64,000 nt of DNA, from assembly GCF_001194135.2 (NCBI RefSeq), contig NC_069001.1:39733940-39797939 (forward strand), given 5' to 3'. A program made the translations under genes and the position numbers. Origin of the DNA: Octopus bimaculoides. Taxonomy: Eukaryota. Below are positions 14,901-23,900 of the stretch, piece after piece. The notes below the pieces were generated by a model. The model did not search any database. It saw only the letters and a list, made by a program, of their open reading frames with translations, and had not been told where the DNA came from. Position 1 is the first letter of the stretch. Each line of letters opens with the position of its first letter.

Positions 14901-17900
14901 AGAAACAATGTATAGAATTTGCCATTGAAGCACGGCCATCATGTCGATATATGCCCAAAAATAAAAATTCCTTAAAATACAAAATATGGAAGGTTGTTGT
15001 GTCACCTAAGTTCGAATATGTCGTCATGATACTGATTGCTTTAAATACAGTCGTCCTCATGATGAAGGTAAATTAGTCCTTCATGTTTCTCTTTCCAGTT
15101 TTTATTGTCCTTATTAAGAATTAGTAACTATACAATGTCAGCATAATTGATACTCGTAACTGACCGTTATTAATTTGTTCTTTAACAATGAATCGATGTT
15201 TTAGTAAATTATAAAACACAAATGGTTTATTTTGTAACAATGCTTTATTGGGTTCTTATTTTGAATTTAAAGCTAGAAATTTATAAGGGATAGGTACAGT
15301 TAATTAAATTGTCCCTATTAAAATCTTATGATAGCTTGTAATTATGATAATTGTTAATTAGAAGTATAATTTTCTACTGTCTACATAAATTAAATCATTT
15401 AAAAAAATTAATTTGGAAATATTTAAATGTTATCTAATTTCTAGATTAGTTTCTTGTTTTTTGTGTTGTTTTTCTGAAGAAATAGCAAAACTATGGCAGC
15501 TAAGTAAAAATATTGTTTTATTCTTCATGTTTACTGACTTTTGTTTCAGAAAAATATGCAGGGAAATATAATAGCATTTTACTATAAAGGATGGGAAATA
15601 TCAGGAAATAGTGGCAAAGTATTTCTTTAAATGACAAGAATTATTGGGAATTGTTTGTTTGACTGTAAAAGACTGGAAATATCAGGAAATACACACATAC
15701 AGGCCCCTATCAACCATCATAACTTCTCTGTCTTTATCAATATCTTCAATCCACTTTCCCTTTCTGATGTGGATTGGATGGTTTATCTGAGGCAGCATCT
15801 TCTAATTATATGCCCTGCTTGTTACCTACATACCTATCACCCTTTAAAACACAGCATTGGGGCTTACCTATTTTAAAACACTGTTATGGTATTGATATAT
15901 ATTAAAGGAAGATAATCTAAGCATTATTATCAGCCAGTTGAGTGATAATCTATTAGAAATAAATCTATAGTTTATTAAAATATCGTTTACTCCATGGAGA
16001 CACCTGTGTATGATTTCATTTCATGTCAGGTCCCAGCATTCATATAATTCTGGAAAGATTTGTTTATTAAACTATTCCTTGTTTGTCATTTATTGTACTT
16101 CTTGCTGGCTCAAAGTTCGGTCTATTGAAATGTAGGTTTAATTGTGAGGCTAAAATATTTGCAACCACAGAGTTTTAGGGATCAGATTAATCCCTTGTGA
16201 ATAAAATTTGGTTGATGGAAACTGTGGGGATGCCCATCACATACACATATATATATATATTTAGCTTGCCAGTTAGCTAGCTAGATGACTGATTGATAGA
16301 TAGATAACACAAGGAGTAACTGGCCCCTTGCCCTCCTCCAATAACATGTAAATGCACAATCTGTTTGTTTGCTATCTAAGCCAGCAGCAGTTAAACCGGC
16401 AACCCTTCCCTCCCATCCCCACCACCACTTCTTGAGAACGTTGGAGAGTACCCAGTAGTGCCAGAAATAACAGCTAACCATGTGGGGGTTGTAGACTCTT
16501 ACGTATTTGTCTTCATCTCTAATTACTGGTACCCTGGCCTTTACAGCTTCGTCTGTACTCTCCATGATTATAACAACACCCCTATCGAATCAATTTAAAG
16601 AAAGGGAATATTTTTAGTTTCTTTCTTGTTGTTACTACTACTACTACTACTACTACTACTACTTCTAGAGCTGCTGCTGTTATAATAATAATTGTTGTTG
16701 TTGTTTTAATTGTTATTAATGCAAAGTTAGAGTTTTGTCTGTAATGAAGTATTTTGTTAAAAATGAAGTAAAATTTGATTTGATTAAATTGGATGACTAA
16801 TGACTCCATACAATGAGAAAATAAATATTTGAAAATGGTTAATTTTACAAAGTTAATTAGTAATTAATAGATGTCATTAACTGTATCATTTATAATAATA
16901 ATAATCTCACTATTGACACAAGAAGTATTATATTTTCCAATATTTTCCTAATGCTTTCTTTCAGAATTAATGCTTCGTTTCATTTTTTTGTTTCTTGAAT
17001 ATTGTTGTTGCCTTCTGTCTTTTTTTTTTTTTCCTTTTGTTTTAAATCGTTCGTTGGTATTTTTGTCTAGAAAGAAAATAAGCTCATTATATTTTTTCCC
17101 TTTCTTTGTCAGTATAATGGCTCGTCACATGAATATAAAAATGCTCTTCAGAAACTTAATTTAGCATTCTCAGTGTTGTTCACAATAGAATGTGTGCTGA
17201 AATTAATGGGATTTGGCATAAGGGTAAGCCAGGAAACATAGGGTCTCAAAGATTGTTCTCTTGCTTTATTTTTTTCAATTTCTAGCTGCTACCTTTGCAA
17301 GGTTATCAAAAGACCCTATTTTACTAAATTCAACCTCATTTTCACTAAGTTGTCCAATTTTAATGGACAAACATAAATCAGCAAACATATTTTCTTGTTA
17401 AACAATTAATGGCAAGGGTGTTTCTTCTTTTTGTTCTTTTTCTCAATACAAATGAATTAGGAGGAGACTTTTAAGCTTTTCACAGTATTGCAAAACATTC
17501 TACACATATATATATTCACATACGTGTGTGTATATATATACACACGTGTGTGTGTGTGTGTGTGTGTGTGCATAATGCAAATATATATGGGGTGGGGACA
17601 GAAAGCAAAGCCAACTATTGTTGGATATTTAAAACTCAGAGAATGGCTGGGGAACAGAAGTTTGTATCTCATGCGGGTTATTCTGACGTAGACCTATCAG
17701 AACATTTTCAGTGTAAGACAAGGGAGGGGGTGGAACAGTGTCTTCAACTTGTAGAACAATTTCTTAGGATAAAATGCTAGGAGATAGCAATGAAAACCCT
17801 GAAGAGAGTTTGCTTACTGTGTGGAAATTTTTTCATTCCTTGCAGCAATTAAAATTTTGAACTCTCTTGGAATTTAATGTTGTCAACACAGTTCTTTACA

Positions 17901-20900: not shown

Positions 20901-23900
20901 GCTAGCTATGGATGCTAGATTTACTATGAATCACCAAATATTCAATCTTGTAGACACCATCAGCAATTACCTCCATCAAGTGTATCTCAGTCATACTACT
21001 TTGATTAATATTACTACTACTACTAATAATAATAAGAATAATGATGATTATGATGATGATAATAACAAGGCGGAAGATTGTGATTGATTTTAATGGTTGT
21101 GTTAGTAAAGTAAATGATGGTCTTACTTGATTGAATATTTGTTGGTGTCTGAGCATGTTTAAAATATATTGAGACCAGTCACACAGGAAATACAGAGCAA
21201 TCAATAAACAGGCAAGTATTTTAGTATGGATTTCTTACATATATATAGTAATATTGTTTCTTGGTATTTTGTTCCTTTTTCAGTTCTATGTCAACCCTTA
21301 TCCTGAACCGAACCCACAGGCCAAAATCTTCCTGAACGTTCAAAAATACATAAACATTGCCTTCACTATTCTTTTCACCATTGAGTGTGTTCTGAAGTTA
21401 CTTGGATTTGGACTCAAGGTTCAAAACTGTATTATGTTGGCTGCTGCCTTTTGTTGAGTGTCCTCTATGTTAGTACCTGCCAACTGAGCTCCTCCTCCTC
21501 CTCCGCCTCCTGCCCCCCACCCCATGAAAAAAAACCTTTTGTTTCCTTTTGTTGCACATTTGTAGACATAAGTTTTCTTTTCTTTTCTTTTTTTTTTCGT
21601 ATTCCCTATTTTATCTCTTAAGCACCCATCATTCTCCTTTCTTGCAATAATAAGACAACTATTTTTTTTATTTCATAGTAAAATTAGCTGTAGTGGGTGT
21701 GATTTTTCTTGCAATGATAAAATAATAATATTAATCCGCAATCTGACAACTGTTTCACCAGACTAGCTGTAGTGGGTGTGGCTGTCAGTCCTAGTTGGTG
21801 TTCTAGTGGGTGGGCCACTAGAAGGACTCCTTTCAGATAAAGTTTGACATGTACAGATTCATCAATTAATGAAGTAAAATTAAAGTTTAAAAATAGAAGT
21901 GTGTTTGATCTGCTAGAAATAGCACACTAATCTCCTTTAAATCACATCCTACTATCTTAAATGAACTTTTGGAAGTGCAGTCTCATGTGTGTGTGTGTGT
22001 GGATATGTATGTTTATATACATACTCACAAAAAGAAAAGAAATTGATGGTCAACACAGGACTGTTGTTGATCATAGATCTGTTCAAAAAGAGCTGATCTA
22101 GGGTTATATAGATGGATGGGCAGGGGCGGATAGATAGATAACTGTCATATGAATTTGAAATTTTGGAAGCTTTTGTGTTTATTTTCAGAAGATTTAAGTA
22201 ACTCTTCATCTCCAATTCTAATTTGTTCTTCCTTTATTGCTAAAACAAATGATCCATCATCATCATATTCAACTTTATCTAAAAGCATAAAATCTTCGAC
22301 ACATTTAATGCTGTTATCTCACCCAACCAGGCAACTGCATCACTAAGCAGAAGATAGAAAAATTGCTAACCCCATTAGTAATTCAAATTGAATTTATTAA
22401 TTTAGAATAAACATGAAATTTGAAATAATTACAATTTGTAGAATCTCACTATAGATTTAATTAACTAGTACACTAATTACTCTCATTGCAGAACCTCTTT
22501 ACTGGCACCACCTATCCTTGAAACACTTCTGCAGTTGCTATTTTGATTGATTTTGATTGATTTTTCAACAATAATATTGAATTTGAGGGACTATGATTTA
22601 GTCTTTGTAATATTCTTTGAAGAATATTTAAGGAGAATAAGAAAAAATTCCCAAAATCATGTAGACTTACTCTGGGAGTACGTTTTCGATGGCAGCAGTT
22701 AAATGAATCAAATATATTTTTGGACTTCGAAATTATAAATGGTTTTGAGAAATATCTTATTTAATTGTGTTTTGACTATTTTAGTTTCTCGCTGGAAACA
22801 TAGATTGTTACAGACAGCTAATTACGGCTTCACAATCTACAGTTCTTGAGGGTTTATCAATCAATTTTGCAGTTAAAGGAGGAAACAAGATATTTTTCTC
22901 ATAATTGCCTTTTAATAATTAAGAGTAAAGTAATATAATAAGTTTGCTACGTGCAGCAAACACCAACCACATGAAGTAAATGAAAGAACAGCATCTGTAT
23001 ATAATGCTAGTTCAGGATAGTTAAGTGAGCCATCCAAAATAGAAAAAGTTGTCTTACTCTTCCTTACTTTGATCTCATGTTTTATCATTTCTCTCATTAT
23101 CTCATTCATCCATGTACTTCAAGGATATCTTCACATCGGTTTCTTAATTTAGTCATCATTCCATAGACATTAAATGATGAAATAAATGTTGAAAAATAAT
23201 TTATTTAGCAATCTATGGGGGAACTATGTTATACATACATTTGATAGATAGATAGATATTTTCTGTTCATAATTTAGAAGTTCTTTTTGGTTTATTTTCA
23301 TTTTGTTTGAAGTTATTTTTTACATAACTACTACCATTATGATTCCCTCCTCTTCCCACCACTATGAAGGTACTATCCATTAAACATACAGTGAAAGTAT
23401 TCTCTGCATGATTTCTACACTCTTGCTCTCTCTCTCTCTCTCTCTCAATCATATATATATATATATATTTATATATATTTATATATATACACATACATAC
23501 ATGCATACACAAATACATATATATATATGCTCAGTGATTGTGTTGTAATAAAGCACACCTTACATATTTTGCTCAGTTTCCACCCAGTCCCAGCCAGCTC
23601 CATCTCTCTCTCTCTCTTTCTTTCTCTCTGTCTTTCTCTCTCTCTTTCTCTCCTCAATATTCTCTCAATCAGTGTGCTATTTTCTGAAACTCTGTGTCAG
23701 TATGTCTTGCGTTGTTATAACACTGTTGTCAGTTATTACACTGTCGTCACTGTAAAAGCTGATCATTTTTCTGGCTTCATATGTCTATCTACTTTCAAAC
23801 AGACTTGTTGAGAACTGCCAGCAATTATAAGTGGTTTAAGGGTCACAGAAAACAGACTTCCATTTTCTTCTCTTTACTATTTTCCATCATTCCCTATTGC

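What the first reader, a model, noticed from the sequence alone, without database searches (positions are those of the whole stretch)
17113..21418. Duplicated, apparently mutually exclusive exons remodel the extracellular IVS1-S2 loop
Seen: two paralogous phase 0-0 exons 4 kb apart share the IVS2 core ([16 protein letters not shown]) but have unrelated loops: [15 protein letters not shown] versus the 8-aa-longer, Pro-rich [23 protein letters not shown]. Including both would duplicate a transmembrane helix and skipping both would delete S2, so exactly one should be used. Both lengths are 3n and the spacing excludes steric interference, so an active exclusion mechanism is implied. Established: vertebrate Cav2 has mutually exclusive EF-hand exons 37a/b, and Cav1 has them at IS6, IIIS2 and IVS3; I do not recall a well-studied pair at IVS2. 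Inference: the isoforms may differ in gating or in toxin and glycan interactions at voltage sensor IV.
Basis: partly seen in the sequence, partly recalled or inferred. Interest (0 to 1): 0.8.

Follow-up and report, generated by a model that had tools for sequence, protein, structure and literature searches.

The report
Octopus Cav2 alternative IVS2 exon pair
The octopus presynaptic-type calcium channel gene (Cav2) has two old duplicate exons, used one at a time, that give the fourth voltage sensor two versions of its outer loop and second helix; the pair is real and regulated, but a 2018 paper already lists it and its function is untested.

Summary
Exon A (17113-17223, 37 aa) and exon B (21284-21418, 45 aa) are homologous, phase 0-0 exons with AG/GT borders. 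They lie between the IVS1 exon (14903-15067) and the IVS3 exon (32732-32821) of a Cav2-type alpha-1 gene; the best solved match is human Cav2.2.

RNA contigs from eight public runs join each exon directly to both flanking exons. None joins A to B. Five runs carry both forms and three carry only B, so exon B is not a pseudoexon and the choice varies between samples.

Exon B plus 137 nt upstream and about 70 nt downstream is identical in another octopus species, and the upstream flank is identical in DNA runs under at least four, possibly five, species labels. Exon B's donor is far from consensus (AAG|GTTCAA). The matching second exon in a sea slug and two unidentified invertebrates has AAG|GTTTGC. 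I infer, without a direct test, that A is the default and B needs activation.

The pair is not new. Dunn et al. 2018 (PMC5818475) list exactly these octopus sequences as a conserved mutually exclusive IVS2 pair in Aplysia, oyster and octopus.

New here: junction evidence, conserved flanks, a three-exon cluster in a sacoglossan, and two-exon gene models in insect, ostracod and flatworm. How exclusion is enforced and what the isoforms do remain unknown.

The parts
14903..15067 (+). Constitutive exon: end of the III-IV linker plus IVS1 (KQCIEF...[10 protein letters not shown]). Its donor AAG|gtaaat is the shared upstream splice partner of exons A and B.
   Evidence: RNA contigs end or branch exactly at 15067.
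17113..17223 (+). Exon A (R-type): 37 aa covering the IVS1-S2 loop, the S2 helix and the start of the S2-S3 linker. It has the canonical length, aligns without gaps to human Cav2.1/2.2, carries an NGS glycosylation sequon, and has a near-consensus donor AGG|gtaagc.
   Evidence: Spliced 15067->17113 and 17223->32732 in X1, X7, X10, X11 and X14.
21284..21418 (+). Exon B (K-type): 45 aa, with the same S2 core but a Pro-rich loop 8 aa longer and no sequon. Its donor AAG|gttcaa misses consensus at all four positions +3 to +6.
   Evidence: Spliced 15067->21284 and 21418->32732 in X1, X5, X7, X9, X10, X11, X13 and X14. All sampled 31-mers are held by runs under four species labels.
32732..32821 (+). 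Constitutive exon IVS3 ([30 protein letters not shown]), the shared downstream splice partner.
   Evidence: It matches the loose-end consensus AACTATTTCCGTGATCGATGG behind both exons.
21147..21283 (+). Intron flank upstream of exon B that does not vary between octopus species. It holds the polypyrimidine tract, the likely branch site and one GCATG at 21153. Presumed regulatory.
   Evidence: 100% identical to contig L003 from another octopus species, while more distant intron is about 85-90% identical. All sampled words are held in DNA runs of organisms A, B and C, and in unclassified runs of organisms F and D.
21419..21488 (+). Invariant intron flank downstream of exon B, containing the weak donor and GGCTGCTGCCTTTTG. 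Presumed regulatory.
   Evidence: No unusual local fold: z = +0.64 for 21147-21488.
20828..20950 (+). A second fully conserved intronic block, 335-455 nt upstream of exon B. Its 3' end (20930-20947) can pair with 21129-21146.
   Evidence: Both arms are conserved but there is no covariation to test.
20200..20214 (+). Weak candidate 'docking' sequence TGAAAGGTAGCAGCT. It is complementary both to 17284-17296 (AGCTGCTACCTTT, 61 nt after exon A) and to 21439-21453 (21 nt after exon B).
   Evidence: Helix scores (32) equal the mean of the shuffled controls (31-33, sd 3). Its conservation could not be tested. It is listed only as a lead.

Best explanation
This is an old tandem-duplicated, mutually exclusive exon pair in the single octopus Cav2 (N/P/Q/R-type, cacophony/UNC-2 orthologue) alpha-1 gene. 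Each mRNA takes one of the two exons, so voltage-sensor domain IV gets either a canonical 15-residue S1-S2 loop with an N-glycosylation sequon (A) or a 23-residue Pro-rich loop without one (B). A few residues also differ in the outer half of S2 and at the S2-S3 junction. The invariant S2 residues (N, F, E, K; core [10 protein letters not shown]) stay the same.

Shown: both exons are spliced to the same two neighbours. They are not joined to each other in assembled transcripts. Their ratio changes between samples, from B only to A more than twice B. Exon B and its intron flanks do not vary across octopus species.

Inferred splicing logic, about 50% likely: exon A, with a good 5' splice site, is the default. 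Exon B, whose 5' splice site is far from consensus (as it is in the equivalent exon of other invertebrates), is recognised only when cell-specific factors bind its conserved flanks. The same programme then represses A. Exclusivity would come from this coupled regulation, not from sterics, NMD or spliceosome type. Any A+B or exon-less product would be an in-frame but misfolded channel, left to protein quality control.

Inferred function, about 50% likely: the isoforms tune the gating of voltage sensor IV and/or extracellular interactions (glycan, gating-modifier toxins). By my recollection (not checked here), this would resemble the effect of splice inserts in the neighbouring IVS3-S4 loop of vertebrate Cav channels.
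For: Exon anatomy. Cav2 domain IV identity: best PDB matches are human Cav2.2 (7MIX residues 1438-1555, E 8e-75), Cav2.1 and Cav2.3, and exon A aligns without gaps. Junctions: loose ends on both sides of A and of B are the 15067 and 32732 exon sequences in X1, X5, X7, X9, X10, X11, X13 and X14. Upstream-exon contigs stop exactly at 15067 or run on into B. In X1 the depths add up: A 7.3 + B 11.2 is about equal to the upstream exon's 18. Regulation: depths for A/B are 26.9/11.8 in X10, against no A contig and 9.9 for B in X9, same species and same study. Age of the duplication: of 17 aligned codons with the same amino acid, 10 differ synonymously, and nucleotide identity is 61%. Conserved flanks. 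By contrast, only 0.46 of the words in exon A's downstream flank are shared with organism B. Weak donor of the second exon in octopus (GTTCAA), and GTTTGC in Plakobranchus c3, L010b and L012b, against gtaag donors for all first exons. Independent record of the pair: Dunn et al. 2018, PMC5818475, Table 1.
Against: Only assembler contigs were available, not raw reads, so rare A+B or skip-both transcripts cannot be excluded and no true junction counts exist. Samples are coded, so tissue specificity is unknown. No trans-acting factor is identified: motif counts near the exons are unremarkable, with a single GCATG in the conserved flank. Conservation of exon A's flanks is known only roughly. No functional data exist for either isoform in any species. 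The S2 core is identical in A and B, so the functional difference could be small.
Confidence: 0.75

Rival explanations
1. Exclusivity is enforced by competing long-range RNA base-pairing of the docking-site/selector type, as in Dscam exon 6 or 14-3-3 xi. One intronic docking sequence pairs with either of two selector sequences next to the alternative exons, so only one exon is released for splicing.
For: A similar element, GCTGCTRCCTTT, lies just downstream of both exons (17284-17296 and 21439-21453, the latter inside the invariant flank). A single site between the exons (20200-20214) is complementary to both. The exons are 3n and 4 kb apart, the situation in which such mechanisms have been described. 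There is also a 23-nt pairing 21460-21482 / 26404-26426 scoring 41, against shuffled controls of 31 +/- 3 with maximum 38.
Against: The docking/selector helices score 32, the mean of the shuffled controls. No equivalent shared flank motif is found at the three-exon locus of the gastropod. The invariant block around exon B has no unusual fold stability (z = +0.64). Conservation of 20200-20214 and covariation could not be examined.
Confidence: 0.15
2. The two exons are independently regulated cassette exons and splicing enforces no exclusivity. A+B and exon-less mRNAs are made at a low level and are simply non-functional. Apparent exclusivity reflects strong opposite regulation plus loss of rare forms during assembly.
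For: Both error products stay in frame, so nothing at the RNA level would remove them. Contigs drop rare variants (tool note). Gene predictors readily join both exons, as in the Elysia, Timema, Cyprideis and Macrostomum models.
Against: In five runs that contain both forms, the contig carrying exon A continues without a break into the downstream constitutive exon, and the contig carrying exon B begins in the upstream one. An A-to-B junction common enough to survive assembly would have broken those contigs at the exon ends. In X1 the A and B depths add up to the depth of the shared exon.
Confidence: 0.15
3. Exon B is a non-functional pseudoexon or an annotation artefact.
For: Its donor site is poor. 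The only exon-B protein hit in the big databases is an unspliced genomic ORF (P0004).
Against: It is spliced precisely to both neighbours in eight RNA runs under three species labels, and is the only form seen in three of them. It is identical in nucleotide sequence in runs under four species labels, with invariant flanks. GenBank and the literature record it.
Confidence: 0.01

Closest known systems
Molluscan CaV2 alpha-1 'IVS2' mutually exclusive exon pair (Dunn et al. 2018, Sci Rep 8:3263, PMC5818475, Fig. 1 site 4 and Table 1)
   Same: It is the same feature. The paper lists Octopus bimaculoides KOF72118.1 'FYVNP...LGFGLK' (exon B) and XP_014784009.1 'YNGSS...MGFGIR' (exon A), beside Aplysia 'FDP....CAYGK / KYGT...GTGAR' and Crassostrea 'FEGMS...LIGCGK / FSNKS..LAFGIK'.
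   Different: The paper only catalogues the sequences from database and transcriptome comparison. It gives no junction evidence for octopus, no gene structure, no mechanism and no isoform physiology. The three-exon cluster in sacoglossans, the conserved weak donor and the non-molluscan occurrences are not in it.
Drosophila cacophony (Cav2) IS4A/IS4B mutually exclusive exons (eLife 2025;13:RP100394, PMC11828482)
   Same: Another invertebrate single-copy Cav2 gene. It swaps a voltage-sensor helix through a pair of equal-phase 3n exons (99 bp each), so NMD cannot police the choice there either. The isoforms differ in activation voltage and active-zone localisation.
   Different: The Drosophila pair is in domain I S4, not domain IV S1-S2/S2. 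That paper states that cac has only two mutually exclusive sites (IS4 and the I-II loop), so it reports none at IVS2.
Vertebrate Cav1.2 exons 21/22 (IIIS2), 8/8a (IS6) and 31/32 (IVS3), and Cav2.2 e37a/e37b (recalled from general knowledge, not tested here)
   Same: Tandem duplicated exons that substitute a transmembrane segment or an adjacent domain of a Cav alpha-1 subunit. Exons 21/22 likewise replace an S2 helix.
   Different: Different gene, domain and lineage. As I recall, several of these pairs (8/8a, e37a/b) are not multiples of three, so double inclusion or double skipping shifts the frame. The octopus exons are 111 and 135 nt. No Cav2 structure sequence matched in the PDB search shows a second IVS2 version.
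Splice inserts in the IVS3-S4 loop of vertebrate Cav channels (Cav2.1/2.2 e31a 'NP/ET'; Cav1.1 exon 29; recalled, not tested here)
   Same: Alternative splicing that reshapes the extracellular face of voltage sensor IV and changes gating kinetics, voltage dependence and omega-agatoxin sensitivity. This is the best functional analogy for what an altered S1-S2 loop could do.
   Different: Those are small optional inserts in the neighbouring loop, not a substitution of the whole S1-S2 loop plus S2.

Membership tests
Cav2 (N/P/Q/R-type) alpha-1 subunit, repeat IV voltage-sensor domain | Sequence is closest to Cav2 rather than Cav1, Cav3, Nav or NALCN, and aligns to IV S1-S3. | tested here: met
   best hits are human Cav2.2 7MIX residues 1438-1555 (E 8e-75), Cav2.1 8X90 and Cav2.3 7XLQ. 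Cav1 scores lower (E 1e-57), then Cav3 and Nav; the rest of the window carries repeats III-IV, the EF-hand and the proximal C-terminal exons that follow it, colinear with oyster Cav2.
Mutually exclusive (tandem duplicated, substituting) exons | Adjacent homologous exons with the same phase that encode the same structural element. | tested here: met
   two copies only, 50% aa identity over 36 residues, both phase 0-0.
Mutually exclusive (tandem duplicated, substituting) exons | Each exon is spliced to the same upstream and downstream constitutive exons. | tested here: met
   identical loose-end consensus on both sides of A and of B in eight runs.
Mutually exclusive (tandem duplicated, substituting) exons | Transcripts with both exons or with neither are absent or rare. 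| tested here: inconclusive
   No A-to-B joint or skip appears in contigs of five runs containing both forms. Contigs drop rare variants, and raw-read counts were not available.
Mutually exclusive (tandem duplicated, substituting) exons | Both alternatives are maintained in related species. | tested here: met
   Exon B is identical in runs under four species labels. Exon A is identical in organisms A and B and has one synonymous difference in D. Duplicated exons are present in Plakobranchus, Elysia, Aplysia and Crassostrea.
NMD-policed mutually exclusive exons | Exon lengths are not multiples of three, so double inclusion or double skipping shifts the frame. | tested here: not met
   111 and 135 nt. 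A+B reads through without a stop.
Sterically enforced mutually exclusive exons (alpha-tropomyosin 2/3 type) | The intron between the alternatives is too short to be spliced, or the branch point lies too close to the upstream donor. | tested here: not met
   The intervening intron 17224-21283 is 4060 nt.
U2/U12 spliceosome-incompatibility exclusion | One of the flanking introns has U12-type signals (donor /RTATCCTT). | tested here: not met
   The donors are gtaaat, gtaagc and gttcaa. None resembles the U12 consensus.
Docking-site/selector RNA-pairing exclusion (Dscam, 14-3-3 xi type) | A conserved docking sequence is complementary to a selector beside each alternative exon, beyond chance and with conservation or covariation. 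| tested here: inconclusive
   A candidate triplet exists (17284-17296, 20200-20214, 21439-21453), but it scores at the mean of the shuffled controls. No analogue is seen in the gastropod locus. Conservation of the docking site was not testable because the read-laying tools were exhausted.

The most novel reading that the evidence does not exclude
The IVS2 pair may not be a molluscan peculiarity. It may be a very old module, from the protostome ancestor or earlier, made of a canonical first exon ending in Arg with a consensus donor and a second exon ending in Lys, often with a longer S1-S2 loop and a deliberately poor donor (GTTTGC/GTTCAA). It would have been kept for more than 500 Myr to give the single presynaptic Ca2+ channel gene two versions of voltage sensor IV, and chosen by an exclusion mechanism that is neither steric, nor NMD, nor U12-based, possibly RNA pairing. 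For this reading: the same order (R exon, then K exon) is seen in octopus, sacoglossans, two unidentified invertebrate genomes (L010, L012), and in gene models of a stick insect, an ostracod and a flatworm. A mite isoform fragment uses a K-type exon. Against it: the S2 core sequences do not group by type across taxa. Oyster has K/K by the paper's table. Drosophila is reported to have no pair at this site. The evidence outside molluscs is genomic or from gene models only.
Probability: 0.25. Interest if true: 0.6.

Novelty: already known. Interest (0 to 1): 0.3.

Why it matters
Most invertebrates have a single Cav2 gene for fast transmitter release, so splice choices do the work that gene duplicates do in vertebrates. 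In Drosophila, the analogous IS4 pair decides activation voltage and active-zone localisation (PMC11828482). An exon pair that swaps the outer loop and S2 helix of voltage sensor IV is therefore a plausible tuning knob for synapse type in the octopus nervous system. It would also be a natural experiment on what the sensor's S1-S2 loop contributes to gating, glycosylation and toxin binding. Because both exons are multiples of three and 4 kb apart, the locus is also a clean case for asking how mutual exclusion is achieved without sterics or NMD. None of this is new in kind, and the pair is already catalogued. The value lies in the untested physiology and mechanism.

Tried and rejected
I fell back on short stretches and on loose-end consensus.

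2. I expected runs X15-X20 (organism D) to be DNA and to give intron conservation around exon A. They turned out to cover exons only.

3. A third, decayed exon copy in the octopus intron, suggested by a weak tblastn hit at 16031-16117 and by the three-copy gastropod locus, was rejected. The IVS2 profile finds nothing above 8.5 bits apart from A, B and IIIS2.

4. The generic inverted-repeat search is swamped by (AT)n palindromes. Unrestricted RNAduplex gives meaningless long bulged duplexes or times out. An ungapped helix scan with shuffled controls gave no pairing clearly above chance for the docking idea.

5. Counts of RBP motifs (GCAUG, YCAY, UCUCU, UGUGU, YGCY) around the exons are unremarkable.

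6. Shared flank motifs among the three gastropod exons are only T-runs.

7. Assigning orthology of the R and K exon types by S2-core identity gave no separation: K-K 54%, R-K 55%, R-R 59%.

8. The local fold of the invariant block is not unusually stable.

9. Protein searches returned no spliced exon-B protein and no squid or cuttlefish sequences, so conservation of B in decapodiform cephalopods and Nautilus remains untested. Look-ups of the Timema and Cyprideis contigs failed.

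
Full report
**Observation**

- Window 17113-17223 (111 nt) translates to [37 protein letters not shown]. It is bounded by ttgtcag| and AGG|gtaagc.
- Window 21284-21418 (135 nt) translates to [45 protein letters not shown]. It is bounded by tttttcag| and AAG|gttcaa.
- The upstream exon 14903-15067 (KQCIEF...[10 protein letters not shown]) ends on a complete codon. The downstream exon 32732-32821 ([12 protein letters not shown]...) starts on one, so both alternatives are phase 0-0.
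- The intron between them is 4060 nt.
- A+B read together has no stop codon.
- The similarity is not chance. Reciprocal tblastn inside the window gives E about 3e-10. A profile of IVS2 exons run over all six frames of the 64 kb finds only these two copies; the next hit is the IIIS2 exon at 11751-11813.

**What gene this is**

A 122-residue peptide built from the upstream exon, exon A and the downstream exon matches repeat IV S1-S3 of human Cav2.2 best (7MIX residues 1438-1555, E 8e-75). Cav2.1 and Cav2.3 follow, then Cav1, Cav3 and Nav. Exon A aligns without gaps to the human segment [37 protein letters not shown].

An oyster Cav2 protein maps colinearly over the window, from the II-III linker through repeats III and IV, the EF-hand and the proximal C-terminal exons that follow it. 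The public octopus protein models P0069, P0171 and P0172 (UniRef A0A0L8G...) are 100% identical to many of these exons and carry exon A. Both translations match the O. bimaculoides entries cited in the literature. DNA runs of 'organism A', including a 2015 genome project, hold the intron sequence completely. The window is therefore the Cav2 alpha-1 gene of that octopus or a very close relative.

**RNA evidence**

Only assembler contigs of public RNA runs were available, but they are informative. I laid them on exon B +/-200 nt and on exon A +/-200 nt.

- In every case a contig covers exactly the exon.
- Its overhanging ends read ...GTCGTCCTCATGATGA(AG), the end of the 15067 exon, and AACTATTTCCGTGATCGATGG..., the start of the 32732 exon.
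- This holds for exon B in X1, X5, X7, X9, X10, X11, X13 and X14, and for exon A in X1, X7, X10, X11 and X14.
- Contigs of the upstream exon stop exactly at 15067 in three runs, which is the branch point of an assembly bubble. In X7 the contig runs on into exon B.
- No contig joins A to B.
- In X1 the depths add up: A 7.3 + B 11.2 against 18 for the shared exon.

The ratio of the two forms moves between samples:

| Run | Exon A depth | Exon B depth |
|---|---|---|
| X10 | 26.9 | 11.8 |
| X11 | 8.5 | 5.9 |
| X14 | 14.6 | 9.6 |
| X1 | 7.3 | 11.2 |
| X7 | 6.75 | 9.6 |
| X5 | no A contig | 3.8 |
| X9 | no A contig | 9.9 |
| X13 | no A contig | 4.3 |

X9 and X10 come from the same species and the same study.

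So exon B is a genuine, precisely spliced exon, the two are used as alternatives, and the choice is regulated. What is not shown is the complete absence of rare A+B or skip-both forms, because contigs drop rare variants.

**Conservation within octopods**

- Exon B is held with all sampled 31-mers by runs under four species labels. Exon A is held by labels A and B, and label D shows one synonymous difference.
- A genomic contig from another octopus species (L003) is about 87% identical to the window over intron. It is 100% identical from 21147 to 21488, which is exon B plus 137 nt upstream and about 70 nt downstream. It is also identical in a second block, 20828-20950.
- The 137-nt upstream flank is held completely in DNA runs of organisms A, B and C, and in runs of unclassified type from organisms F and D.
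- By contrast, the 257 nt downstream of exon A are complete only in organism A and 46% in organism B.
- Invariant intron flanks are the usual signature of a tightly regulated alternative exon.
- The block has no unusual folding energy (z = +0.64).

**Age of the duplication**

Over the 29 codons that align without gaps, 7 are identical, 10 differ synonymously and 12 differ in amino acid. Nucleotide identity is 61%. The ten-residue core [10 protein letters not shown] is therefore kept by selection on the protein, not by recent duplication or conversion.

**Other species**

| Source | Evidence type | What is there |
|---|---|---|
| Plakobranchus ocellatus (sea slug), locus L001 | genome | IVS1 exon followed by three IVS2 exons |
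| Elysia marginata | gene model | strings Plakobranchus-type c2 and c3 together |
| L010 (unidentified invertebrate) | genome | 36-aa exon ending GFGR with AGG\|gtaagg, then a 55-aa exon ending AFGIK with AAG\|gtttgc |
| L012 (unidentified invertebrate) | genome | 37-aa exon ending AFGVR with CGG\|gtaagc, then a 42-aa exon ending LGPK with AAG\|gtttgc |
| Timema tahoe (insect), Cyprideis torosa (ostracod), Macrostomum lignano (flatworm) | gene models | two IVS2 exons in tandem, again first ...R then ...K |
| Tropilaelaps (mite) | annotated isoform fragment | a K-type exon joined to IVS3 |
| Oyster isoform X17 | annotated isoform | a 55-aa long-loop K-type exon |
| L008/L009 (unidentified invertebrate) | genome | a single copy only |

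The three Plakobranchus exons are:
- c1, 13981-14091: HYEMSS...GYGLR, donor AGG|gtaaga.
- c2, 16190-16300: YDGMSD...GFGVR, donor CGG|gtaagg.
- c3, 18209-18334: FEPSAPALNGEQ...CAFGK, 42 aa, donor AAG|gtttgc.

The recurring pattern is a canonical R-ending exon with a good donor, followed by a K-ending exon that often has a longer loop and a poor donor. This suggests common descent. However, the S2 cores do not cluster by type: K-K 54%, R-K 55%, R-R 59% identity. Outside molluscs there is no RNA evidence either.

**Literature**

Full-text searches found one paper that describes this site. Dunn et al. [quoted passage not shown] Their Table 1 lists, under 'IVS2':
[quoted passage not shown] The octopus entries are exactly exon B and exon A. 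No functional or mechanistic work on the pair was found. For Drosophila cacophony, only two mutually exclusive sites are reported, IS4 and the I-II loop.

**How exclusion might work**

Three textbook mechanisms can be excluded from the sequence.
- The intervening intron is 4 kb, so sterics do not apply.
- Both exons are multiples of three, so there is no frameshift and no NMD.
- The donors gtaaat, gtaagc and gttcaa are not U12-type.

What the sequence does show is an asymmetry. Exon A's donor matches consensus at three of the four intron positions +3 to +6, and the shared upstream donor does too. Exon B's donor matches at none of them. That weakness is conserved in the equivalent exon of other invertebrates, and exon B sits in invariant flanks.

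The simplest reading follows the logic of exon definition. Without an activator, exon B is not defined, so A's donor goes past it to the IVS3 exon. With the activator, B is defined, and A must be repressed at the same time, since B-only samples exist. This coupled, factor-driven model is my best guess, at about 50%.

A docking/selector RNA-pairing model has one intriguing lead. GCTGCTRCCTTT lies just downstream of both exons, and a single complementary site sits at 20200-20214. But the helices score no better than the shuffled controls. The gastropod locus shows no analogue. Conservation of the docking site could not be checked. I put this model at about 15%.

A third possibility, also about 15%, is that splicing does not enforce exclusivity at all and rare in-frame error products are handled at the protein level.

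**Likely function**

Residues that do not vary between the exons or across the aligned species include the S2 N, F, E and K, and the core [10 protein letters not shown] is identical in A and B. The differences are these:
- Loop length: 15 versus 23 residues.
- Proline content.
- An NGS sequon present only in exon A.
- S/T, V/I and L/I changes in the outer half of S2.
- MGFGIR versus LGFGLK at the S2-S3 junction.

I recall from general knowledge, and did not test here, that splice inserts in the neighbouring IVS3-S4 loop of vertebrate Cav channels change gating and omega-agatoxin sensitivity. The Drosophila IS4 pair changes activation voltage. By that analogy, the isoforms most likely tune the gating of voltage sensor IV and its extracellular interactions. 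This is inference only.

**Verdict**

- The pair is already on record, so its novelty is low.
- The additions here are junction-level support, regulated usage, invariant flanks, a conserved weak donor, a three-exon cluster in sacoglossans, and hints of a much wider and older distribution.
- The exclusion mechanism and the physiology remain open.

Noticed in passing
window 15018 and 14951 (IVS1 exon); 17184 (exon A): RNA contigs read G where the window has A. At 15018 (TAT->TGT, Tyr->Cys) this is seen in X1 and X10 (same species as the window) and X14. At 14951 (ATG->GTG, Met->Val) it is seen in X14. At 17184 the change is synonymous, in X17 of another species. These are candidate A-to-I recoding sites, typical of cephalopods, or polymorphisms.
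   Followed up: partly
window 32732-41013, versus proteins P0069/P0171/P0172: The public octopus protein models (UniRef A0A0L8G525, G5M3, G6E5) join exon A directly to [13 protein letters not shown] (41259...). They therefore omit the IVS3-IVS6 and EF-hand exons, which are present in the window at about 32732, 35687, 36570, 37070, 38281, 40236 and 40918. The old gene models are incomplete.
   Followed up: partly
L001 (Plakobranchus ocellatus BLXT01005122.1) 13981-14091, 16190-16300, 18209-18334: The sea-slug Cav2 gene has three tandem IVS2 exons, not two. The published gene model stops at the IVS1 exon, and an Elysia model fuses two of the alternatives.
   Followed up: partly
window 25685-26326 and 20495-20680; 16577-16742: Long perfect (AT)n palindromic microsatellites lie in the introns, and an (ACT)n-type repeat is matched at very high depth by RNA contigs.
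   Followed up: no
window 52911-53054: An acidic, Tyr-rich exon (LFWEDDIKEYRDDDDYKEYHDDEEYHEDYKDYQEYQEDYKDYDEDYNQ) corresponds to the optional 'large insert' C-terminal exon that Dunn et al. list for octopus. It is a second alternative region of the same gene inside this window.
   Followed up: no
window 21042-21236 (intron upstream of exon B): Run X14 has a low-depth contig that lies wholly in the conserved intron just upstream of exon B. It is probably pre-mRNA.
   Followed up: no
proteins P0016 (Timema tahoe), P0043 (Cyprideis torosa), P0011 (Macrostomum lignano), P0153 (Tropilaelaps): Gene models outside molluscs contain two IVS2 exons in tandem, or use a K-type exon. This hints that the pair is widespread in protostomes, although Drosophila is reported to have none at this site.
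   Followed up: partly
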